DNA from: Octopus sinensis | Lineage: Eukaryota | Direction of reading: 5' to 3' | NCBI RefSeq assembly: GCF_006345805.1 | Contig: NC_042998.1 | Coordinates: forward strand, 10,354,001-10,418,000 | DNA length: 64,000 nucleotides | In this document: positions 42,225 through 64,000 of the stretch, one piece after another | Layout of the letters: each line of letters begins with the position of its first letter | Numbering within the stretch: position 1 is the first letter of the stretch | Notes under the pieces: generated by a model | The model's input: only the letters and a program-made list of their open reading frames with translations | Database searches by the model: none | Told to the model about the DNA's origin: nothing | Made by a program: the position numbers and the translations under genes

Positions 42225-43317
42225 ACACACGCACATACATATATATCTGTATATATATATATATACAAACTACATATATATGTATGTGCGTGCGTGTGTG
42301 CATATATATATACATTTATAGTACGTGTATATATGTATTTGTGTGTATATATACATACATACATGCATACATACATACATATATATATATACATATATAT
42401 GTATGTATATATAGGTAAAACATTAAGGAGTGTGTGTGTGTTACATAATATTTTCAAGATTAAATAAAAAGACTACAAGCACAAAATTTGATATACTATA
42501 TATAGATATGTCAAATGTTCCATTTGTTGCCTTTATATTTAATCCTGAATATATATATATATATATCATGTTTACGTATTTGTTTTGCAACGCACATGCA
42601 TGCGTACATACATACATACATACATACATACATACATACATACATACACACACACATACATACATACATACATAGGTACACGCATACATACATATACAAT
42701 ATACAATATTTACTGGACGGGTATTATACACATAGCTTCACGCTGGCTTATTTGCATACTTTCGGTGAATGTATGAGCAGGATACAGAGAAGTTGGACGT
42801 ATAAATCAGCAAAAGATACCCTATATTCCTACACCATGCTTAATCTTGTGTAATTACTGATTCATTCGTCACACTTCAACAAATTTGGAGAAAAAAACTA
42901 TGCTTCGATGAAGATGTCAGAATAAGGCGGAAACATGTATTGAGTTGTTACATCTATAAAGTGGTAAAATTAAAATAATATTGATATCGACTAATATTGT
43001 TTGTCTTTTCCCTGTATATTTATTTCTAATTAGCTTTCTTTAATGCTGCATATATTAAATATGTTTATACTGCGTAATATTGTTTTTTTCTATATAGACG
43101 GTACGTCTGAATGATATGATTTCTAAAGAATTCTATTTTTTTTTACACTAATACATGTAAAACATTGTCTATTTATTTAGTGATTTGTTCAGATTCACTT
43201 CGGAAATTACAGTAAAAACTATACTATGCTGAAAAGATAGGTCAAAATAAGACGAGAACGGACCCAGAGTTGTCTTCCATACGTGCTGGAAAATGAAAAC
43301 GGTATCAATCAGCCACA

Positions 43318-43400
43318 ACTCTTTTACTCTTTTACTTGTTTCAGTCATTTGACTGTGGCCATGCTTGAGCACCGCCTTTAGTCGAGCGATGTTGCGGGGA

Positions 43401-43445
<45 letters not shown>

Positions 43446-43483
43446 ACACACACACACATACATACATACATGTATATATATAT

Positions 43484-43546
<63 letters not shown>

Positions 43547-43717
43547 CATATATACGACAGGCTTCTTTCAGTTTCCGTCTACCAAATCCACTCACAAGGC
43601 ATTGGTCGGCCCGAGGCTATAGTAGAAGACACTTGCCCAAGGTGCCACGCAGTGGGAATGAAGCCAGAACCATGTGGTTGGTAAGCAAGCTATTAACCAC
43701 ACAGCCACTCCTGCGCC
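43318..43717 (-). mobile_element. SINE family A
   Basis: Match with expanded internal microsatellite and an internal deletion. Confidence 0.88.
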
Positions 43718-45059
43718 TTCCAGTCTATTTATCTCTTGTGAACTGTTCAGCTACTTTAATGATATGAAATAGGGAAATGACTTGGAATAAATATGCATTT
43801 AATATATCAAAATTGACTTATCTAAATGATAAAATAATTGATAATGAATTCAATAAGTTAAGGCACGGTTTTACATTTTAATAATAAAACTTTTTTTTTA
43901 TGTAAAAGACGATTTATTCTAAGAATAAATGATAAAAGTTTGATAGAAATATGAAATGTTGGACACATGGATACAAACTTTAAATTTTCGATGTATACAT
44001 TTTTCCTAAGTCGTGATTTGTAACTCTGGCATAAGGCCATACATTTTTAAGGAGAATATAGTCGATTAAATAGTACTTGATTGATATTTTATTTCATCGA
44101 CCACTGAAGGATGAAAGACAGGGTTAACGTCAGTGGGATACGGATTTGTGACATAAAGGCCAGTAACTAATTACCACAAGGCATTGCGTCTGACGCTCTA
44201 AGCAGTCTATATATATATATATATGTATAAATATAAACAGGAAAAACTTAATGAAGATAATGAAATACTATATCAGATATGTATATAAATGTAAGTAGAG
44301 CTTCTATAAGTTGGATATGTACGCATAGAGCGTTGATAGATATGGGCTACAGATGTTCCTATGTGCGTTAATATATATATAATCCTGTATTATAATCCTC
44401 TACAGCCGATCTTACGAATCGGTTTCACACCGGATATTGGGTAACCGCGTAGTTATATGACACACGTGCTCTTCAAGGATGGCAGGCATGAAAATATATG
44501 GTGACTGTTCTCTGTTAATGGTGGCGAGAAAGTATCAAATCCGGATACTATTTCTTTATTTAATGATATTATTTCTTTATTAAATCCGGATACATTCATA
44601 GACAACACACACACACACAATGGATTCTCCTGTCGATTTCGATGTATGAGGGTCCAACAGCCTTAGCTGTTAGATTACCCATACATATTCGATTTCAAGG
44701 GTGATGGTTTGTATAGGACCAGTCATAACTTTGAAAAAGCGGAGAGAGAAAGCTGGTGGATAATTTTGCCACAAACACAAACACAATAATAAACACCCTT
44801 TAGTCTTTTCTATTAGAATTCTCCATCTTCTGGGTTAGTTGCCTTTGCTGCGCTTTAGAGCTCAACCTACCCTAATAGACTTGGTGGTGTTACCGGTTTA
44901 GCAACCGCCCACCCCTCCATAACTGGTTTACATGTATGTATGTGTACGCATGTGTAAACTGTTGTAGAAAATAAAATTTAATAAATAACATATACTATGT
45001 TAATTAGACACGTAGATTTATGTATGACGATAATCCTTTCGAGTGAGGTGACTAGTCAA

Positions 45060-46036: not shown

Positions 46037-46386
46037 TCTTTTACTTGTTTCAGTCATTTGACTGCGGCCCTGTTGGAGCACTGCCTTTAGTCGAGATAAT
46101 CGACCCCAGGACTTATTCTTTGTAAGCCTAGTACTTATTCTAGCGGTCTCTTTTGCCGAACCGCTGAGTGACGGGGACGTAAACACACCAGCATCGGTTG
46201 TCAAGCAATGCTAGGGGGACAAACACAGACATATATACATATATACGACAGGCTTCTTTCAGTTTCCGTCTACCAAATCCACTCACAAGGCATTGGTCGG
46301 CCCGGGGCTATAGCAGAAGACAGTGGGACTGAACCCGGAACCATGTGGTTGGTTAGCAAGCTACTTACCACATAGCCACTCCTGTG

Positions 46387-47237: not shown

Positions 47238-47353
47238 CTAACAGAAAAGAGACTAGCCACCAGGATTGAACCAAGGACCTTTAGATCTTCACTCTAATGT
47301 TCTCCCAACTGAACTCTTTCGGTTGCATATTATATATCTCCTTATCCTTTATA

Positions 47354-53152: not shown

Positions 53153-53293
53153 GGTAAGTAGCTTGCTTACGAACCACATGGTTCCGGGTTCAGTCCCACT
53201 GCGTGGCACCTTGGGCAAGTGTCTTCCGCTATAGCCTCGGGCCGAACAAAGCCTTGTGAGTGGATTTGGTAGACGGAAACTGAAAGAAGCCCG

Positions 53294-53366
<73 letters not shown>

Positions 53367-53900
53367 TGTGTGTCTGTGTTTGTCTCCCTAGCATTGCCTG
53401 ACAACCGATGCTGGTGTGTTTACGTCCCCGTAACTTAGCGGTTCGGCAAAAGAAGCCGATAGAATATATAAGGCGCAGGAGTGGCTATGTGGTAAGTAGC
53501 TTGCTTACCAACCACATGGTTCCGGGTTCAGTCCCACTGCGTGGCACCTTGGGCAAGTGTCTTCCGCTATAGCCTCGGGCCGACCAAAGTCTTGTGAGTG
53601 GATTTGGTAGACGGAAACTGAAAGAAGCCCGTCGTATATATGTATATATATATGTATATATATATACATATGTGTGTTTGTGTGTCTGTGTTTGTCCCCC
53701 TAGCATTGCTTGACAACCGATACTGGTGTGTTTACGTCCCCGTCACTTAGCGGTTCGGCAAAAAGAGACCGATAGAATAAGTACTGGGCTTACAAAAAGA
53801 ATAAGTCCCGGGGTCGATTTGCTCGACTAAAAAGGCGGTGCTCCAGCATGGCCGCAGTCAAATGACTGAAACAAGAAAAAGAGAGTAAAAAGAGTAAAGA
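53153..53900 (+). mobile_element. Tandem SINE family A dimer (partial 53153-53462 plus full 53472-53900)
   Basis: Head-to-tail copies flanked by a 65-bp duplicated segment. Confidence 0.88.
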
Positions 53901-55572: not shown

Positions 55573-56383
55573 GGTACCAGCACTTAAAGCTAATAGTGAG
55601 CACACAGCGCATGCCCTCAAAGTAGAAAAAGAGAGAGAGAGAGAGAGAGTTGAACCGTTACTAAGTTGGGACTCATTTTCAGCTGAGTAGATGGAGCAAT
55701 GTGAAACGAAGTGTTTTTGGTCAAAGGCAATCATGAACCCAACACTGTAACCATTAGACTCCTAGCCCAACCCAGTCCAGTGTAGAACGTGTACCCGTAT
55801 AACCTAAGTCATTACATCTGAAACCCTCCCTGCCCTAATGTATATCTAATACTGAGTTGTCGAATATATCTTTCTTCATTTACGACACAGTGTCTCTAGC
55901 ACTGTATTATCCAAAGTGTTGCTCCGTTTTTAAGACAAGATGTGACTGAATATGAATTGGTTTCTATTTTTAGCAGAGGAGGCAACCGCATAGAGACTTT
56001 TGAAATTTAGTACTTTTATCTTGTCCCACATTTGGGGATACGATAATTGCCAATCTACGCTTACATTTGATGTGTACTGTGTACTAGTGTACTAGTGGGA
56101 CCCGTGAATATTTCACGGAGTTAATGATAAACCTATTTGGTTATTTCTGAAAACTCTATTAAAAAAAAAAACATATCCTAAATGTTTGGGGCGGGGTTAA
56201 TCGATTACTTCGACTCGTACTCAACTGGTAGTTGTTTTTTTTTTTGACCCCGAAGGTCTGATTGCCTAAGTCAATCTCGGCGGAAATTGAATCCGCGTAA
56301 CATTTTGTGCGGTGTGCTTGCCTCCTTAATTTATGACGCAATAATAAAAAGATTGTGGGAACCGGATCTCCAGTTTTATTCTG

Positions 56384-56775
56384 AGCAGGAGTGGCTGTGT
56401 GGTAAGTAGCTTGCTAACCAACCACATGGTTCCGGGTTCAGTCCCACTGCGTGGCATCTTGGGCAAGTGTCTTCTGCTATAGCCCCGGGCCGACCAATGC
56501 CTTGTGAGTGGATTTGGTAGACGGAAACTGAAAGAAGCCTGTCGAATATATGTATATATATATGTATGTGTGTGTTTGTGTGTGTGTGTTTGTCCCCCGA
56601 GCATTGCTTGACAACCGATGCTGGTGTGTTTACGTCCCCCGTCACTTAGCGGTTCGGCAAAAGAAACCGATAGAATAAGTACTGGGCTTACAAAGAATAA
56701 GTCCCGGGGTCGATTGCTCGACTAAAGGCGGTGCTCCAGCATGGCCGCAGTCAAATGACTGAAACAAGTAAAAGA
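56384..56775 (+). mobile_element. SINE family A
   Basis: Full-length match. Confidence 0.9.
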
Positions 56776-57192
56776 TACAATGTGTGATCTATTCAAAAGA
56801 GAACAAACTATGCTTAATAACCGATTAGAAGTTGGATATACACGAATTTATGTGGAGTTTTAAGCAAACGGTAACTGTTCCTTTGTCTCATTTGAAATAG
56901 CATCTTTTCAAAACAGACACGGATGCAAGAGAAGAAATCCCCTTACTAACGTCGCTTAATCGTTCAATATATTTTGTTTTCCTCGTACAATACTCCTACA
57001 GTATATCTCCCGATAGATATCTGTTTCTTCCTTAGCAATAGTCAACTCGAAGAGACATCATATACTTTAGTTAGATAAGGCTTAACGACAGCGCACAGTG
57101 ATGGCTATAAAATAAGGACCTTAATTAACTATTAGTAATTATTGAATGGGAAAAGATCATGGAAGAAAGTAAAGACTATAAAGTAGACTTAC

Positions 57193-57392
57193 GTTGGCCC
57201 ATACTGGAAAGATAGCGTCGTTAAGTGAGCATTGGTTAAGGCAAGTAATACAATGCCAATAATATACACATAATCATTTGAGAAGTACACAGGAAATGTC
57301 CGCTGTTCCGGTAAATAGTTGCAAAACATGAAGAATGGAATACAGATGAGGCCTCTGATAATTGCTACTAACCAAATATACTTCACTGTAGG
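57193..57392 (-). CDS. SLC29A: Equilibrative nucleoside transporter (ENT/SLC29) penultimate coding exon, TM9-TM10 region
   Basis: Translates PTVKYIWLVAIIRGLICIPFFMFCNYLPEQRTFPVYFSNDYVYIIGIVLLALTNAHLTTLSFQYGP, matching the ENT pattern R..FIPLF..CN...P....ND.......FA.SNGYL......GP. Acceptor ctttatag|CCT, donor AC|gtaagt; 200 bp (phase 0 to 2). Family-level call only. Confidence 0.9.
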
Positions 57393-58139
57393 CTATAAAG
57401 AGAAAGAGTAAACATATATTATAAATATAAATATGAATATATATATTTATATACATAACAATTATGTTTATATACCAACAGAATGTGGCAGTCCTATAAA
57501 GGACAATGTAAGTGTTGTTTTTTTCATATAAATATGAAAATAAAACAAAGGAAAATGCATACATTTTACATAGTTTTCGTGTAATTTAAAATTTATTCTA
57601 TATTGTGTTTGTCGACCGGTTTCACTTTCGCTAATCACGACATTGAAATTATTGTAATTTCATATTTTCTTAAGAAGATTTTAGTCCATGTTGTATGTGG
57701 AGAAGTTTATGAATGAATGATTCAACAAGCAGAAAAATCTAAGTGGGGGGGGGGGGTAATTGGCGATCGTTATTACTGGGGACAGGGAAGGTAATTGTTC
57801 ATCTTTCGGGAGAGGATAAATAAATGTACACAAAACTCAAAAGCTAAAGTAGTGAGATGAAATATGTATAGTGATGGGTATGTTATCATAAATCAAAATA
57901 TATACTGAGATCAAAGTTGGTTATGCACTGATATTTAGACGTGTTCTGTATTTTTTGATGAACAAATATTCATTATTTTAACGCTCTCATACAGAAATTG
58001 TCTCTTTGCACTGGTTGATGGGTGAAAACTGTGAAGTTTGGTTGGATATTACCGGCACATCTCTCTATGTGTTCATTCAAAGGAATCTGTATTGCATGAA
58101 CCAGATCTGTTCCTTGTATATATATATATATATATATAT

Positions 58140-58230
58140 ACCCTCCTTCTTCCATTTTCCTGAGCGCCTAATAATAATAATACTGTAATTGTTCCACGTG
58201 TTGTTGTTTTTTCTGTTTTCCCGTTTGGAT
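58140..58230 (+). repeat. Fragment of the same interspersed repeat as 3260-3350
   Basis: cctgagcgccta.taataataatactgtaattgttcc...ttggattaa shared. Confidence 0.6.
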
Positions 58231-58484
58231 TAACCTTATATATATATATTGATATATATATATATACATGAGGAAAAGATCCTTCTGTTGCTAATATATA
58301 TATGTGCGCGCGCGCGTGTGTATGTGTGAATGTGTGTGCGTGTGTGCGTGTGTGAGTGTGTTGTGTGCGTGTGTGTGTGTGTGAGTGTGTGTATGTATAT
58401 ATATATATATATATCTTAATATATAAAATCCGTTCCGCATATATATCCACATATATATTAGCAACAGAAGCAGTGTTAAGACCG

Positions 58485-59201
58485 AATGGCTATCTTCATA
58501 TTCTACTTAATATGGGTTAGAATGCTGTATCATTGCTGTATTCACCCCGAGAGATCCTGTCATATAGCTCTACTGTGTTAAGAACACGGGAACATATCGT
58601 TAGCAGACGAAACTATCTGCCATGGGCACTGGAACAGCCAGATCATGTGATTTCAGCGTATTTGCACTTCCTCAGTAGCAGGCATTTGCTCGTTTCATGC
58701 CAGCCAAATCTCTGCCAACAATATATAAAATAACAGAGCGCTCGCCTGCCACTGATATTTGCTTGTGCTCTTAGTAATGTAAGTCTATATGAGAGAGTCT
58801 CTTAAAGCGAACACGGCGACCGAATAATACATTCACGTTAAGTAGGGCATAAAGAATGCCATTTGATATAACTACATTTTCTGTCACAAGTATTTATTTC
58901 TTTTTAAAGTTTTCTGGCTATTTGCAACAACCAGTGACTGAACAGTCACTGTTATTCTATATATTATTGGCAGCGAGATTTGGCTGACCTGCGACGAAAG
59001 ACACATATCACAGAAGAAGTGCATGTTCGCCGAAATCACGCGATCTACCAGTTCCGGTGCTCATGCCAGACAATTCTCAACTAACGATATATGTCTGTGC
59101 TTTTAGCTCTGTACGTCTATATTAGAGACGAATATCTCTGTAATACAAATACGACGCTTTAATAATACATTCACGTTAAGTAGGATATAAAGATTGCCAT
59201 T
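58485..59201. repeat. Old inverted repeat, arms about 250 bp, about 210-bp spacer
   Basis: 58485-58740 matches the reverse complement of 58949-59201 in several blocks (e.g. cagccaaatctc.gccaacaatatataaaataacag); 58823-58868 is also repeated directly at 59161-59206. Confidence 0.8.
58635..58681 (-). ncRNA. Type I hammerhead ribozyme, canonical core
   Basis: Minus strand CUGCUA-CUGAGGA-AGUG caaaua CGCU-GAAA-UC acau GA-UC^UGGC: full core, 4-bp stem II, 3-4-bp stem III, 4-bp stem I, AUC triplet. Activity not tested. Confidence 0.8.
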
Positions 59202-59318
59202 TGATACATACATATGTGGTTGAGTGCATGTGTGTAGATATATATATATTTATATATATATATGTTTAAATATTTGTTGTGCAAGATTTTTTATGTGAAG
59301 TCGTGTGTGTTGAAACAG

Positions 59319-59743
59319 ATATTGTTATATTTCGGAATGGTCATATTGCCAGTTAGCCAATAAAAAACACACGCACTATATATTTGGTGTTATTTTGCTT
59401 CAGTGATATTATTTTTTACATTAATCTTAATCTTATTTCGGCCAAAGTTCTTTCGTCACACTCCTGTGACCGCATCAGTGGTCCTTTGTTTTCTTCTCAC
59501 TTATTTGTGTCTCTCCTTACTAACCGTCAGCCATTTTGTAGTAAGGAGAGACACAAATAAGTGAGAAGAAAACAAAGGACCACTGATGCGGTCACAGGAG
59601 TGTGACGGAAGAACTTTGGCCGAAATAAGATTAAGATTAATGTAAAAAATAAATATCACTGAAGCAAAATAACACCAAATATATAGTGCGTGTGTTTTTA
59701 TTGGCTAAACTGGCAATATGACCATTCCGAAATATAACAATAT
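59319..59743. repeat. Near-perfect palindrome, arms about 204 bp, 16-nt loop
   Basis: 59319-59522 versus 59539-59743 differ by about 1 substitution and 3 single-base indels; loop 59523-59538. Confidence 0.97.
59439..59484 (-). ncRNA. Hammerhead-like motif with variant core (mirror copy at 59577-59622, plus)
   Basis: GGACCA-CUGAUGC-G-GUCAC aggagu GUGAC-GAAA-G aa C-UU-UGGCC; A9 replaced by C in both arms. Confidence 0.4.
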
Positions 59744-59948
59744 ATATATATATATATATATGTATGTATTATGTACGTATATATATATGTATATATTATA
59801 TATATATATATATATACATACATATATAGGTTCAGTAAAAATTTAGATTCAGTTGAATATGGTACTTAAGTTAAAGGCACCAGAATTTGGTATGGTATTA
59901 TCCATATAATTCAAAATGGGGTGATTATATCCTTGCTGCTTATTTTGA

Positions 59949-59993
<45 letters not shown>

Positions 59994-60699
59994 TATGTAC
60001 TTAACACATTAAATAAAAACATGCATTAACTTAAAAAAACTGACTCCTGATTGAAAGTAGAATTTTGATTCTGGTTAATTATATGTGTGTGTGTGTGTAT
60101 ATGTGTGTATCACTGTGAGTCTGAATATACATATATGTATTTTTGTATGTGCGTTCATGTGTATGTGTTGAGTGGACACTGATATCAAATAAGATGGTAA
60201 GTACTTATAGTATGCTAATTAGTGACTCCAGTTCTCTGAAGTTACTAGATTTGCTATGTATACAAAACTGATTGGCTACTTTTTTCCGCCTACAGAATTA
60301 AATTTGCTCTGCTTATAAGTCTACTACAAAGGATACATACATCTGTCTGTCTGTCTGTCCCTCTTTCTCTCACACTCTCTCTCACTCTTTCACTTTCTCT
60401 CAACATATATGTACTTATATCTATGTATATGTATATATATAGGCATAAAATTGATAATTTTATTACATTACGTCAATTGACGTAATGTAATAGGTATGTG
60501 CTATGAGTGCTCACTTTGGTTTACCACTAAAACCTCGTCTTCAACTACAACAAAGATGTGTGGTGCTGAAATTGCCTATCCATGGTGGATAGAAGTGGTT
60601 TATCACTGAGCGAGTAGGCATACATTAAAACAGTTAATGAACCAGCAAAACTTTTGACATCATTCTAGTACATATAATTTATAATATAAACATAGCACA

Positions 60700-61267
60700 A
60701 AGGCGGTAAGCTGGTAGAAACGTTAGCACGCCGGACGAAATGCGTAGCCGTATTTCGCCTGCCGCTACGTTCTGAGTTCAAATTCCGCCGAGGTCGACTT
60801 TGCCTTTCAGCCTTTCGGGGTCGATAAATTAAGTACCAGTTATGCACTGGGGTCGTTGTAATCGACTTAATCCCTTTGTCTGTCTTTTTTGTCCCCTCTA
60901 TGTTTAGCTCCTTGTGGGTAGTAAATAAATAGGTATATCGTCTGCCGCTACGTTCTGAGTTCAAATTCCGCCGAGGTCGACTTTGCCTTTCATCCTTTCG
61001 GGGTCGATAAATTAAGTACCAGTTATGCACTGGGGTCGTTGTAATCGACTTAATCCCTTTGTCCGTCCTTGTTTGTCCCCTCTATGTTTAACCCCTTGTG
61101 GGTAGTAAAGAAATAGGTATTTCGTCTGTCTTTACGTTCTGAGTGTAAATTCCGCCGAGGTCGACTTTGCCTTTCATCCTTTCGGGGTCGATAAATTAAG
61201 TACGTTGCGTACTGGGGTAGATCTAATCGACTGGATCCCTCCCACCAAATTTCTGGCCTTGTTCCTA
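60700..61267 (+). mobile_element. SINE family D, tandem trimer
   Basis: Units 60750-60932, 60933-61116 and 61117-61267 (third unit has a different tail). Confidence 0.9.
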
Positions 61268-61354
61268 GAGTAGAAAAGAATGTTTATATTATGAATTAAA
61301 TGTTCTAGAATGATGCCAGATGTATTCTTGTTTTAATATATATATTTTTTATTC

Positions 61355-61660
61355 TTTTAGTTACTTCAGTCATTTTGACTGTGGCCATGCTGGAGCACCT
61401 CCTTTTAGTCGAACAAATTGACTCCTGGACTTATTCTTTGTAAGCCTGGTATTTATCCTATGGGTCTCTTTGTCGAGCCGCTAGGTTATGGAGACGTAAA
61501 CACACGATTGACTTCTTTCAGTTTCCGTCTAACAAATTCACTCTCAAGGCTTTGGTCGGCTCGAGGCTATCATAGAAGGCACTTGCCCAAGGTGACATGC
61601 AGCGGGACTGAACCCCGAACCATGTGGTTGGGAAGCAAGCTTCTTACCACACAGCCACGC
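61355..61660 (-). mobile_element. Diverged SINE family A
   Basis: Recognisable ends, internal repeat deleted. Confidence 0.75.
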
Positions 61661-62214
61661 CTGGACAGGATAGATAGGTATTAACAGATATAGCAAACTG
61701 GTGGTTTAATCATTTGTGACATCAGTTTCTATATAAAATTTTCTGGGAAAACAGGTAAAAATAGAAAATTGTATGTATATGTGTGTATGTATGTATGCAT
61801 GCATATATGTACAAAATGGCGATGGTTGGTATCTATTGCTATGCTATCACTTATTATTCAGAGTATATGCGAGCATCCAGCAAGAGTAAAAACCGAAAAC
61901 TCTGTAAGATAGATGAAGGACAGTACCAACTGCAACTAAATCCAAGGAAGGAAACAGACTCCACTTGAATGGAAGCTTCTCCAATGTTTGATTCTATACA
62001 GGACTGGTTCTGGGTGCAGGAAACCCCAAGACCAAAATGGAAATTCTATGGAAACAACTTAACCAGCATTAAGGAGAAAGGAGAGCACGAGTTGAAAAGG
62101 TAGTGTTATATGGTAGTACGTTAGTCCAGAAAGATAGGGTAAACTGAATCGATTGCATAAATTTTATGTAATTTGTGTATGGTGTCTATAGATGTAATAG
62201 ATTTAATATTTCCC

Positions 62215-62510
62215 TCTGAGAAACATTTTTTCACGCTGAGAGTTGCTGAAGCATGGAACAAACTGCCGGCATCAGTTGTTAGTTGTCAGAGCACTGCATC
62301 CTTCAAAACGTCCATGCTTTCTGAGATTCGCCAACACTACACTTGATTTTCTCCCCTCCATACACACACAAGCATGTATCTGACTCATACATTGTTCGCT
62401 TTCCAGACATTTGTACATTACTTCATATACTTTATATGCACTTTCTGACAAGTTGTGGTGCACCTGAGCACTGTATACAATAATTTCATTATTATCATTA
62501 TTATTATTAT
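62215..62510 (+). mobile_element. CR1-type LINE 3' fragment (subfamily B)
   Basis: aaacattttttcacgctgagagttgctgaagcatggaacaaactgccg...ttattattat. Confidence 0.85.
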
Positions 62511-62771
62511 GAGATAGCAGGGATCTTGTACTAATGCTGAGAGATACTTCGAAAAGGCTTATCCATTCTACATATCTCTATTGAGAGTAGGGAATAAGTA
62601 GGCTGTTGTGTAGTTTGAGAAGAAAAATAAATACTTAGTTGCTTCTTACTGTGAGTTGGTTTTTAATATAAAGAGTTGTTTATGATTGTAATTACATATC
62701 AAGTTAACACTTGTAGTTGTATATTTAGTTGAAATAAACAAAAGTTTTATACACCCAGACAAATATTTATA

Positions 62772-62892
62772 CGTATGTATGTATGTACGTCATCATTCAG
62801 GTTTATTTTGATTTTTTGCTAATAGAGAAAATGCCGGTTTCTAACCTAGATCCAAGGCACCTTCATTGGAATTTTCACATCAACAGCAGGGT
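62772..62892 (-). mobile_element. R4/Dong-like 3' UTR fragment
   Basis: gccaatagagaaa..gccggtttctaacctagatcc matches 12750-12790. Confidence 0.7.
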
Positions 62893-63279
62893 ATGTATGT
62901 ATGTATGTATGTATGTATGTATGTATGTATGTATGTATGTATGTATGTATGTATGTATGTATGTATGTATGTATGTCTTTGTGTATGTATTTCAGTGTTA
63001 TGAATGTATCTGAGCAAGTTAATGAGAGATACGAACCACAGCTGCATGATATTCAACATGTCACCTGATTTATTCGCTGAATCAAGGCTACTCCCTGGGG
63101 TTCGGAGTAGAGCGGTCGATCTACACTTTGGCCATTAAGAGAAATTAAATCAAGTTTGAGAAGACAAGTAAACACTTAGTTGCTTCTTACTGCGATTTGG
63201 TCTTGAATATAAAGAAGCAAATGAGAGGCAAGGTTTATGCACACAGACATAAATATTTATACGTATGTATGAATCTAAT

Positions 63280-63678
63280 GGCGCAGGAGTAGCTGTGTGG
63301 TAAGTAGCTTGCTTACCAACCACATGGTTCCGGGTTCAGTCCCACTGCGTGGCACTTTGGGCAAGTGACTTCTACTATAGCCTCGGGCCGACCAAAGCCT
63401 TGTGAGTGGATTTGGTAGACGGAAACTGAAAGAAGCCCGTCGTATATATATATATATATATATATACGTGTGTGTTTGTGTGAGTGTGTTTGTCCCCCTA
63501 GCATTGCTTGACAACCGATGCTGGTGTGTTTATGTCCCCGTTACTTAGCGGTTCGGCAAAAGAGACCGATAGAATAAGTACTGGGCTTACAAAAGAATAA
63601 GTCCCGGGGTCGAGTTGCTCGATTAAAGGCGGTGCTCCAGCATGACAGCAGTCAAATGACTGAAACAAGTAAAAGAGT
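63280..63678 (+). mobile_element. SINE family A
   Basis: Full-length match. Confidence 0.9.
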
Positions 63679-63751
63679 AATGCAGGAGCTTAAGCGAACT
63701 GAAAGAATGTCGTCTGACGTATTAGAGATTGCAACACTATCCTTTTCTGAT

Positions 63752-64000
63752 GTGGAGGCGCAATGGCCCAGTGGTTAGGGCAGCGGACTCGCGGTCATAG
63801 GATCGCGGTTTCGATTCCCAGACCGGGCGTTGTGAGTGTTTATTGAGCGAAAACACCTAAAAGCTCCACGAGGCTCCGACAGGGGATGGTAGTGATCCCT
63901 GCTGTACTCTTTCACCACAACTTTCTCTCACTCTTACTTCCTGTTTCTGTTGTACCTGTATTTCAAAGGGCCGGCCTTGTCACTCTCTGTGTCACGCTGA
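63752..64000 (+). mobile_element. SINE family B, cut by the window end
   Basis: Intact tRNA-like head. Confidence 0.88.

What the first reader, a model, noticed from the sequence alone, without database searches (positions are those of the whole stretch)
58635..58681. Apparently intact hammerhead ribozyme on the sense strand of the ENT transporter pre-mRNA
Seen: minus strand CUGCUA CUGAGGA AGUG caaaua CGCU GAAA UC acau GA UC^UGGC has every conserved core base, three helices and an AUC site (predicted cut between 58641 and 58640). The mirror copy on plus (59005-59051) has lost U4 and stem I. It lies about 1.2 kb upstream of the 57392 acceptor. Inference: if the gene's upstream exons lie beyond 64000 this is intronic and could cut nascent ENT RNA, with the upstream antisense arm (or its A-to-I editing) acting as a switch. 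The asymmetric decay hints at, but does not prove, selection on the sense copy.
Basis: partly seen in the sequence, partly recalled or inferred. Interest (0 to 1): 0.85.

Follow-up and report, generated by a model that had tools for sequence, protein, structure and literature searches.

The report
Hammerhead ribozyme relic in transporter intron
The hammerhead ribozyme motif is real, but it is one old copy of a repeat family scattered through this genome that carries such a ribozyme, lodged by chance in an intron of a nucleoside-transporter gene, and nothing suggests the gene uses it.

Summary
Observation confirmed. On the minus strand, 58681-58635 has every conserved hammerhead (HHR) core base, three helices and a C17 site (cut between 58641 and 58640). 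It is the only such motif in the window; 150 simulated windows gave none.

It is not a gene-specific device. It sits in a 5'-truncated copy (58736-58439, minus) of a dispersed, non-coding repeat with a ~341-nt unit. That copy lies head-to-head with a ~1.5-unit copy on the plus strand (58741-59261), which holds the decayed "mirror" HHR. Both 3' ends run into TA/TG microsatellites, the insertion pattern known for Penelope-like elements.

The family consensus is a better type I HHR than this copy. Related subfamilies show compensatory changes in helix II, and by direct reading in helix I. Young 359-370-nt tandem arrays exist, matching animal "retrozymes".

- **Not unusual:** 8 of 35 other old copies are as intact as this one.
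- **Location:** it is intronic and on the sense strand of the nucleoside-transporter (ENT) gene.
- **Folding:** the predicted transcript pairs the HHR with the upstream antisense arm (-219 kcal/mol).
- **Selection:** the asymmetric decay of the two copies fits neutral drift.

Most likely a retroelement fossil. Orthologous introns could not be examined.

The parts
58635..58681 (-). Type I hammerhead motif. Helix I 5' strand 58681-58676; CUGAGGA 58675-58669; helix II and loop 58668-58655; GAAA 58654-58651; helix III and loop 58651-58642; C17 at 58641 (cut between 58641 and 58640); helix I 3' strand 58640-58635.
   Evidence: Direct reading. Only descriptor hit in the window, none in 150 simulations. 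One of 112 genome-wide pattern matches.
58616..58693 (-). Extended hammerhead region including the degraded outer part of helix I.
   Evidence: Full-length sub-threshold alignment to Rfam RF02275 Hammerhead_HH9: 21.9 bits against a gathering score of 52.
58439..58736 (-). 5'-truncated copy of the ~341-nt-unit repeat (consensus positions 210-515, 81% identity) that carries the candidate HHR. Its 3' end runs into a TA-rich microsatellite.
   Evidence: blastn of the family consensus against the window; consensus built from 30 genomic copies.
58741..59261 (+). About 1.5 tandem units of the same repeat in the opposite orientation (consensus 337-469, then 86-529; 76-78% identity). It includes the pseudo-LTR-like direct repeat 58803-58868 / 59141-59206.
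   Evidence: (repeat D13).
59005..59051 (+). Decayed hammerhead of the plus-strand copy (U4 changed to A, helix I lost, mismatch at the 10.1-11.1 pair).
   Evidence: row L001_2.
58594..59090 (.). Inverted-repeat pair (arms 58594-58736 and 58949-59090, 75% identical). In the minus-strand RNA it is predicted to form a long imperfect hairpin that buries the HHR.
   Evidence: Fold of 59120-58560 (minus): -219.4 kcal/mol, z -11.2.
58295..58440 (.). TG/TA microsatellite next to the 3' end of the minus-strand copy.
   Evidence: families D1-D4.
59205..59280 (.). TG/TA microsatellite next to the 3' end of the plus-strand copy.
   Evidence: The family consensus also ends in (TA)n.
57189..57392 (-). Open frame containing the ENT (equilibrative nucleoside transporter) exon downstream of the intron that holds the repeat.
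   Evidence: PF01733 positions 213-274, 52.5 bits, E 6e-14; genome scan.

Best explanation
The motif is the hammerhead ribozyme of an old, decayed copy of a non-coding, non-autonomous retroelement.

**The element.** Its unit is about 341 nt, with 43% GC, no long open frame and no tRNA-like head. It resembles the animal "non-LTR retrozymes" and the pseudo-LTR regions of Penelope-like elements (PLEs).

**What the ribozyme does in the living element (inferred from the published model).** The type I HHR sits once per unit. It cuts multimeric transcripts into unit-length RNAs, which can be circularised and reverse-transcribed by a PLE-type enzyme.

**What is shown here**
- The family exists in hundreds to thousands of copies.
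- Its consensus is a canonical type I HHR with a long, interrupted helix I. Its helix III segment was probably the palindrome AUCACGUGAU before CpG decay.
- Helix II covaries between subfamilies, and by direct reading so does helix I.
- Young tandem arrays exist.
- Copies show PLE-style architecture: partial tandems, head-to-head inverted 5'-truncated partners, and 3' ends in microsatellites.

**The window's insertion.** Two such copies landed head-to-head in a microsatellite inside an ENT intron. They have since diverged by about 25% from each other. The minus-strand copy happens to keep its core, as roughly a quarter of old copies do.

**Expected behaviour in the ENT pre-mRNA (inferred).** The HHR is probably inert or nearly so, for three reasons. 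Helix I is weakened and its outer extension is lost. The helix III palindrome is broken. The complementary arm is transcribed first and is predicted to trap the HHR in a long duplex.
For: **A dispersed family**
- 112 exact matches to CTGANGAN{13,14}GAAATCAYRTGATCTGG, against 0 for the reversed control.
- 467 matches to the 17-mer 3' half, against 1 for the control.

**The consensus is a hammerhead.** The consensus of 36 copies reads CUGCCA CUGAGGA AGUGCAGUACGCU GAAA UCACAUGA UC UGGCAG, with a perfect 6-bp helix I.

**Covariation.** In 30 HHRs whose helix II was not constrained by the search, 86.9% of cells pair, against 21-45% when the partners are slid. All four helix II pairs change on both sides: 30 cells against 13.7+-3.2 in shuffles, reached by 0 of 500 shuffles.

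**Young relatives**
- Arrays of 2.3 units x 359 nt (96% match) and 1.9 x 370 nt (98%).
- Their unit aligns along its whole length to the old consensus at 62-65% identity, E 1e-35, GC 42%.
- Their helix I, CCAUCA/UGGUGG, differs from CUGCCA/UGGCAG by compensatory changes (direct reading).

**Architecture**
- Consensus positions 83-155 repeat at 424-497.
- 13 of 30 loci have an inverted partner just upstream.
- The window map shows the same arrangement.
- This matches the PLE pattern described in PMC8557442 and PMC11167929.

**Possible mobilisers.** Uninterrupted RT plus C-terminal GIY-YIG open frames of 781-883 aa are present at many loci.

**Not a SINE.** No tRNA-like sequence, no pol III boxes, longest open frame 85 aa.

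**This copy is not exceptional.** 19 of 35 other copies keep the core; 8 of 35 keep core and helices as well as this one.

**Sequestration.**
Against: - No experiment or RNA data: cleavage, transcription and circular RNAs are all untested.
- No Rfam hammerhead model reaches its gathering score on this copy.
- The young subfamily also scores below threshold: 22.1 bits against 34.
- Nearest-neighbour folding does not favour the HHR fold for the candidate, the consensus or a young copy alike, so it cannot separate active from inactive copies.
- No sequence link to an autonomous PLE was found. Two intact PLE loci share no similarity with the repeat and show no HHR core nearby.
- Within this copy the HHR stretch matches the consensus better than the rest does: 43 of 46 against 169 of 215, p 0.02. 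That would fit local constraint. However, the same bias appears in the other 29 copies, and those copies were retrieved with a query centred on the HHR.
- Orthologous introns could not be examined, so selection on this copy is not formally excluded.
Confidence: 0.85

Rival explanations
1. Exapted intronic ribozyme. The sense-strand HHR is kept by selection and cuts nascent ENT pre-mRNA. The upstream antisense arm, or A-to-I editing of the duplex, decides whether the HHR can fold.
For: - The motif is intact enough to pass a strict descriptor.
- It is on the sense strand and intronic.
- There is precedent: HHRs derived from retroelements are conserved in introns of RECK, CTCL and DTNB in amniotes (PMC6155905). 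The only Rfam hit here is to that HH9 family, below threshold.
- The HHR stretch is closer to the consensus than the rest of this copy.
- A long duplex with the antisense arm is predicted.
Against: - About a quarter of paralogous old copies are equally intact.
- The better conservation of the HHR stretch is family-wide.
- This copy is weaker than the consensus: a U.U mismatch and a wobble in helix I, loss of the CGGA/UCCG and GGCG/CGCC outer pairs, a longer loop II and a broken helix III palindrome (direct reading).
- The motif still sits in a plainly recognisable repeat copy about 19% diverged from the consensus.
- The predicted default state is sequestration.
- The asymmetry between the arms is not significant (my count).
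Confidence: 0.04
2. The inverted pair matters as double-stranded RNA, not as a ribozyme. The roughly 140-bp imperfect intronic hairpin would be a substrate for ADAR editing or small-RNA processing, and could affect ENT splicing. This is compatible with the fossil reading of the HHR.
For: The predicted hairpin is -219.4 kcal/mol, z -11.2 against shuffles. Head-to-head pairs recur at 13 of 30 loci. Cephalopods edit RNA extensively (general knowledge, not tested here).
Against: The arms are only 75% identical. There are no RNA data. Such hairpins are a by-product of the insertion mechanism and are common, so nothing indicates function at this locus.
Confidence: 0.08
3. Chance resemblance: an AT-rich intron happens to contain the short core strings.
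For: No Rfam family reaches its gathering score.
Against: No descriptor hits in 150 simulated windows. The motif is inherited from a repeat whose consensus is a better HHR. 112 pattern matches against 0 for the control. Helix II covaries.
Confidence: 0.005

Closest known systems
Animal non-LTR retrozymes (Cervera & de la Pena 2020, PMC7229834)
   Same: - One type I HHR per unit.
- Non-coding units of a few hundred nt: 341 nt in the old subfamily, 359-370 nt in the young arrays.
- Low GC (42-43%).
- Tandem or partial-tandem copies, many per genome.
[quoted passage not shown]
- Molluscs are known hosts (mussel).
   Different: - The arrays seen here are short (1.2-2.3 units), not long multimers.
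- Many copies are solitary, or are paired head-to-head with an inverted truncated copy.
- Circular RNAs and self-cleavage are untested.
- The old subfamily has A10.1-U11.1 rather than the usual G-C at the base of helix II.
- Two literature searches returned no paper on hammerhead or retrozyme repeats in cephalopods; the second was poorly specified.
Penelope-like elements and their pseudo-LTR hammerheads (PMC4209133, PMC8557442, PMC11167929)
   Same: - Partial tandems that create pseudo-LTRs.
- An inverted 5'-truncated copy next to the upstream end.
- Insertion into microsatellites.
- An HHR in the repeated terminal region.
- Intact RT plus GIY-YIG open frames are present in the same genome.
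   Different: - The element has no ORF.
- Its HHR has a full-sized helix II and a long helix I. The minimal PLE form is also present in this genome as a separate family, and that family is what the Rfam Hammerhead_1 model finds.
- No sequence link to an autonomous PLE was found.
Conserved intronic hammerheads of amniotes (Rfam HH9 and HH10; RECK, CTCL, DTNB introns; PMC6155905)
   Same: A type I HHR of retroelement ancestry on the sense strand of a protein-coding gene's intron. HH9 is the only Rfam model that aligns to the candidate.
   Different: Those are isolated motifs conserved across whole vertebrate classes. This one lies inside a recognisable decayed repeat copy, scores far below the family threshold, and has no demonstrated orthologous conservation.
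Dimer-dependent hammerheads of newt/salamander satellite repeats (described in PMC7229834)
   Same: A short helix III with a palindromic segment (inferred ancestral AUCACGUGAU) that could pair between two ribozymes.
   Different: Helix III here is longer (3 bp) than the one-base-pair amphibian form, so action as a monomer is possible. Dimer dependence is untested. In the window copy the palindrome is broken (AUCACAUGAU), and no second sense copy lies in the transcript.

Membership tests
Hammerhead ribozyme, type I | Conserved core: C3 U4 G5 A6 N7 G8 A9, G12 A13 A14, A15.1-U16.1, H17 | tested here: met
   All present at 58675-58641 on the minus strand.
Hammerhead ribozyme, type I | Three helices around the core, with helix I open-ended | tested here: met
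   Helix I 5 of 6 pairs (one wobble, one U.U mismatch); helix II 4 bp; helix III 3 bp. Weaker than the family consensus.
Hammerhead ribozyme, type I | Helices supported by compensatory change among relatives | tested here: met
   Helix II: all 4 pairs change on both sides, reached by 0 of 500 shuffles; 86.9% of cells pair against 21-45% when slid. Helix I compensatory changes between subfamilies by direct reading. Caveat: the sequences are related repeat copies.
Hammerhead ribozyme, type I | Reaches the curated score of an Rfam hammerhead model | tested here: not met
   No hit at gathering threshold or at E<=10 over 1.1 kb. HH9 21.9 bits against 52 in an 86-nt search. A young relative scores 22.1 against 34 on Hammerhead_1.
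Hammerhead ribozyme, type I | Tertiary contact between the helix I internal loop and loop II | tested here: inconclusive
   The consensus has a long helix I interrupted by an internal loop. In the window copy the outer pairs are largely lost. Specific contacts cannot be assessed from sequence.
Hammerhead ribozyme, type I | Self-cleavage 3' of position 17 | not testable with these tools
   Needs in vitro transcription or RNA-end mapping.
Animal non-LTR retrozyme | Short non-coding units (about 150-450 bp) in tandem, each with a type I HHR | tested here: met
   At family level: 341-nt unit in partial tandems; 359- and 370-nt arrays of 1.9-2.3 units; longest open frame 85 aa. The window itself holds about 1.5 units plus an inverted truncated copy.
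Animal non-LTR retrozyme | Low GC content (below about 45-50%) | tested here: met
   43% for the consensus unit; 42% for the young unit.
Animal non-LTR retrozyme | Expressed as unit-length linear and circular RNAs | not testable with these tools
   No transcriptome data available.
Penelope-like element (autonomous) | ORF with reverse transcriptase and GIY-YIG endonuclease | tested here: not met
   The repeat has no ORF. Such ORFs exist elsewhere in the genome but share no sequence with it.
Penelope-like element (insertion architecture; non-autonomous derivative) | Partial tandems forming pseudo-LTRs, inverted 5'-truncated neighbour, microsatellite targets | tested here: met
   compared with the description in PMC8557442. 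The 30-40-bp 'tail' signature was not examined.
Domesticated intronic hammerhead (HH9/HH10 type) | Sense-strand intronic position in a protein-coding gene | tested here: met
   ENT exons flank it on the same strand. That both exons belong to one transcript is inferred.
Domesticated intronic hammerhead (HH9/HH10 type) | Conservation at the orthologous site across species, beyond neutral expectation | not testable with these tools
   No other cephalopod genomes were reachable. The protein route to orthologous contigs found nothing. Within the genome, intactness is ordinary for the family.

The most novel reading that the evidence does not exclude
This particular copy has been co-opted. It would be a conditionally active hammerhead in the ENT pre-mRNA, with folding gated by the upstream antisense arm. 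For example, A-to-I editing of the duplex, which is common in cephalopods, could free the ribozyme so that cleavage tunes transporter expression. A second, more likely but less striking reading: the family's young 359-370-nt tandem arrays mean octopus has a still-active retrozyme system making circular RNAs that I did not find described in the searched literature.
Probability: 0.03. Interest if true: 0.8.

Novelty: new member of a known kind. Interest (0 to 1): 0.22.

Why it matters
For the ENT gene, probably not at all: this looks like one more decayed repeat in an intron.

The family is of modest interest. It adds a cephalopod (inferred from assembly statistics, unverified) to the animals that carry hammerhead-bearing retrozyme-like repeats. 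The evidence includes clear helix covariation, young tandem arrays that could yield circular RNAs, and Penelope-style insertion architecture. [quoted passage not shown]

It also shows that Rfam's gathering thresholds miss this family, so ribozyme censuses based on them undercount. For scans like this one, an "intact" ribozyme motif should first be tested for membership of a repeat family before any gene-level function is proposed.

Tried and rejected
1. **Rfam at gathering threshold and at E<=10.** No hammerhead hit over the whole window or over 1.1 kb. A 20-locus scan was swamped by microsatellite "miRNA" hits. Only an 86-nt search gave a sub-threshold HH9 alignment.
2. **Rfam Hammerhead_1 over the whole genome.** The listed top ten hits (eight above the cut-off) were mostly a different, minimal PLE-type family. 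It does not report this family.
3. **Thermodynamic folding of the isolated motif.** It does not favour the HHR fold for the candidate, the consensus or a young copy, so it is uninformative about activity.
4. **Route to orthologous loci.** I searched the large protein collection with the ENT exon peptide, hoping to fetch contigs from other octopods. No candidates were found.
5. **ENT-like exon on contig C11994 as a possible second haplotype.** It is a divergent paralogue by direct comparison of the two translated exons, and its flanks share only a 93-bp repeat segment with this locus.
6. **Link to an autonomous PLE.** Two loci with intact RT plus GIY-YIG ORFs share no similarity with the repeat and have no HHR core nearby.
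7. **Six-frame Pfam scan of 57393-64000 for more ENT exons.** A low-complexity open frame on C18 was useless as an ENT query.
8. **SINE classification.** Rejected: no tRNA-like sequence and no pol III boxes.
9. **Species identification from the literature.** Not confirmed. The Octopus sinensis guess rests on my memory of the assembly statistics.

Full report
Read from 58681 down to 58635, the minus strand is CUGCUA CUGAGGA AGUG CAAAUA CGCU GAAA UC ACAU GA UC^UGGCUG. All conserved hammerhead (HHR) core positions are present: C3-A9, G12-A14, A15.1-U16.1 and C17. C17 is base 58641, so the predicted cut lies between 58641 and 58640. Helix I forms 5 of 6 pairs (one wobble, one U.U mismatch), helix II 4 bp and helix III 3 bp. 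A descriptor requiring the core and these helix strengths finds only this site in the 64-kb window, and none in 150 simulated windows.

Rfam does not call the motif. There was nothing at gathering threshold and nothing at E<=10 over 1.1 kb. In an 86-nt search the only hit was a full-length alignment to Hammerhead_HH9 at 21.9 bits, against a threshold of 52.

**2. It belongs to a dispersed repeat.** The window comes from a 2.72-Gb eukaryotic assembly. The consensus of 36 aligned copies is a better HHR than the window copy: CUGCCA CUGAGGA AGUGCAGUACGCU GAAA UCACAUGA UC UGGCAG, with a perfect 6-bp helix I. Variation at CpG positions suggests the ancestral helix III segment was the 10-nt palindrome AUCACGUGAU.

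Extending the alignment gives a unit of about 341 nt. Its positions 83-155 recur at 424-497, a pseudo-LTR produced by partial tandem duplication, and its 3' end runs into (TA)n. The unit has 43% GC, no tRNA-like head, no pol III boxes and no open frame longer than 85 aa.

**3. Map of the window's insertion.**
- 58736 to 58439 on the minus strand is consensus 210-515 at 81% identity. It is 5'-truncated and carries the candidate HHR.
- 58741 to 59261 on the plus strand is consensus 337-469 followed by 86-529, about 1.5 units at 76-78%. It carries the decayed HHR.

The two copies meet head-to-head at 58736/58741. Both 3' ends abut TG/TA microsatellites at 58295-58440 and 59205-59280. Among 30 genomic loci, 13 show the same head-to-head arrangement and many are 1.2-2 tandem units.

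This matches the architecture described for Penelope-like elements (PLEs): partial tandems forming pseudo-LTRs, an inverted 5'-truncated copy at the upstream end, and a bias for microsatellite targets (PMC8557442, PMC11167929). [quoted passage not shown] No sequence link between them and this repeat was found in the two loci examined.

**4. The family's hammerhead is genuine by comparative evidence.** The pattern CTGANGAN{13,14}GAAATCAYRTGATCTGG leaves helix II and the 5' strand of helix I free. It has 112 exact matches in the genome, against 0 for its reversed control. The 17-mer 3' half has 467 matches against 1. Given roughly 19% divergence per copy, I infer thousands of copies.

The matches fall into subfamilies with different but internally complementary helix II sequences: AGUG/CGCU, ACCC/GGGU, GACC/GGUC and GAUG/CAUC. 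On an alignment of 30 of them, 86.9% of cells pair, against 21-45% when the partners are slid. All four helix II pairs change on both sides: 30 cells against 13.7+-3.2 in shuffles, reached by 0 of 500 shuffles. The caveat is that these are related repeat copies.

One subfamily forms young arrays: 2.3 units of 359 nt at 96% match, and 1.9 units of 370 nt at 98%. Its helix I (CCAUCA/UGGUGG) is compensatory relative to CUGCCA/UGGCAG. Its unit aligns along its whole length to the old consensus at 62-65% identity, E 1e-35.

These features match animal non-LTR retrozymes: a type I HHR in short, low-GC, non-coding tandem units, already known in molluscs such as mussel (PMC7229834). [quoted passage not shown] The architecture seen here agrees with that view.

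**5. Gene context.** The open frame 57189-57392 (minus) matches the nucleoside-transporter (ENT) family PF01733 at positions 213-274, E 6e-14. A second exon matching positions 6-37 (E 5e-5) lies on the same strand 27.5 kb upstream, beyond the window's end. The motif is therefore on the sense strand and within an intron of the ENT transcription unit. That both exons belong to one transcript is inferred.

**6. No sign that this copy is special.**
- Of 35 other old copies, 19 keep the full core and 8 keep core plus helices at least as good as here.
- The window's HHR stretch matches the consensus at 43 of 46 positions, against 169 of 215 for the rest of the copy (p 0.02). In the other 29 copies the HHR stretch is likewise better conserved, 84% against 73.5%. 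This is expected from selection on the source elements and from retrieval with an HHR-centred query.
- The two arms carry about 5 and about 11 changes in the HHR stretch.
- Relative to the consensus, this copy has a wobble and a U.U mismatch in helix I and a longer loop II. It has also lost the CGGA/UCCG and GGCG/CGCC outer pairs of the long helix I, and its helix III palindrome is broken (direct reading).

**7. Predicted RNA behaviour.** The isolated 85-nt RNA folds no better than shuffled sequences (z +0.64), and not into the HHR fold. The same failure applies to the consensus and to a young copy, so this says little. In the 561-nt minus-strand context the minimum-energy structure is a long hairpin pairing the HHR arm with the antisense arm: -219.4 kcal/mol, z -11.2. 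The antisense arm is transcribed first. The default expectation is therefore sequestration. A "switch" is conceivable but has no support.

**8. Verdict.** The motif is real and non-random, and it is intronic on the sense strand. It is best explained as a fossil hammerhead of a retrozyme-like, PLE-style repeat. The kind is well known. The octopus family appears undescribed in the searched literature (the second search was poorly specified). The species is inferred as Octopus sinensis only from my memory of the assembly statistics and was not confirmed.

Intronic co-option has precedent in amniote HH9/HH10 (PMC6155905), but it needs orthologous conservation, which I could not test.

Noticed in passing
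window 59319-59743: A near-perfect foldback in the same intron. Inner arms 59409-59522 and 59539-59652 are 99% complementary with a 16-nt loop. Outer arms 59319-59417 and 59645-59743 are 92% complementary. It could be a MITE-like element or a hairpin-RNA precursor. It drew spurious plant-miRNA Rfam hits.
   Followed up: no
window 56377-56775, 61416-61672, 63283-63676 (and many other places, e.g. 43169-43767, 46140-46375, 53167-53742): A very abundant short interspersed repeat, present in both orientations at 84-97% identity between copies. It gives the recurring pseudo-peptide '...PNPLTRHWSARGYSRRHLPKVPRSGTEPGTMWLVSKLLTTQP...'. Copies are often next to TA/TG microsatellites.
   Followed up: no
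window 47260-47315 (minus): The only Rfam hit at gathering threshold in the window: a partial tRNA-like match (29.9 bits, model positions 9-63). It may be the head of a tRNA-derived SINE rather than a tRNA gene.
   Followed up: no
window 60750-61257: Three tandem units of about 183 bp (96% and 64% identity to the first). Parts of them are inverted-repeat partners of 56240-56291.
   Followed up: no
L031-L040 (e.g. G000:C13:29988995-29989039; tandem pair at C16:25146363 and 25146794): A second, unrelated hammerhead family in the same genome: GUAC CUGAAGA GACCC..GGGUC GAAA CAUGUG UC GUAC. This is the minimal form typical of Penelope-like elements. It is what the Rfam Hammerhead_1 model detects (8 hits above threshold out of 74 scored, from 265,664 first-look candidates).
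   Followed up: partly
L079:2220-4562 (+), L080:4039-6687 (-), and many loci listed: [quoted passage not shown] The 781-aa length and the identical scores recur at about ten loci, which suggests a young Penelope-like element family. No hammerhead core was seen within the 8-kb stretches fetched.
   Followed up: partly
family consensus positions 193-219; loci L001, L002, L006, L024, L027, L030: 5'-truncated copies repeatedly begin at consensus positions 200-215, around the 3' arm of a perfect 8-bp hairpin (CAGUGACU GAAA AGUCACUG, consensus positions 193-212). This may be a preferred stop or strand-switch point for the reverse transcriptase.
   Followed up: no
L075 (G000:C30:3250001-3260000) and L077 (C30:3283001-3292000): The same 2.3-unit, 359-nt retrozyme-like array with the same flanking open frames occurs twice, about 32.7 kb apart. 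This points to a recent segmental duplication or an assembly duplicate.
   Followed up: no
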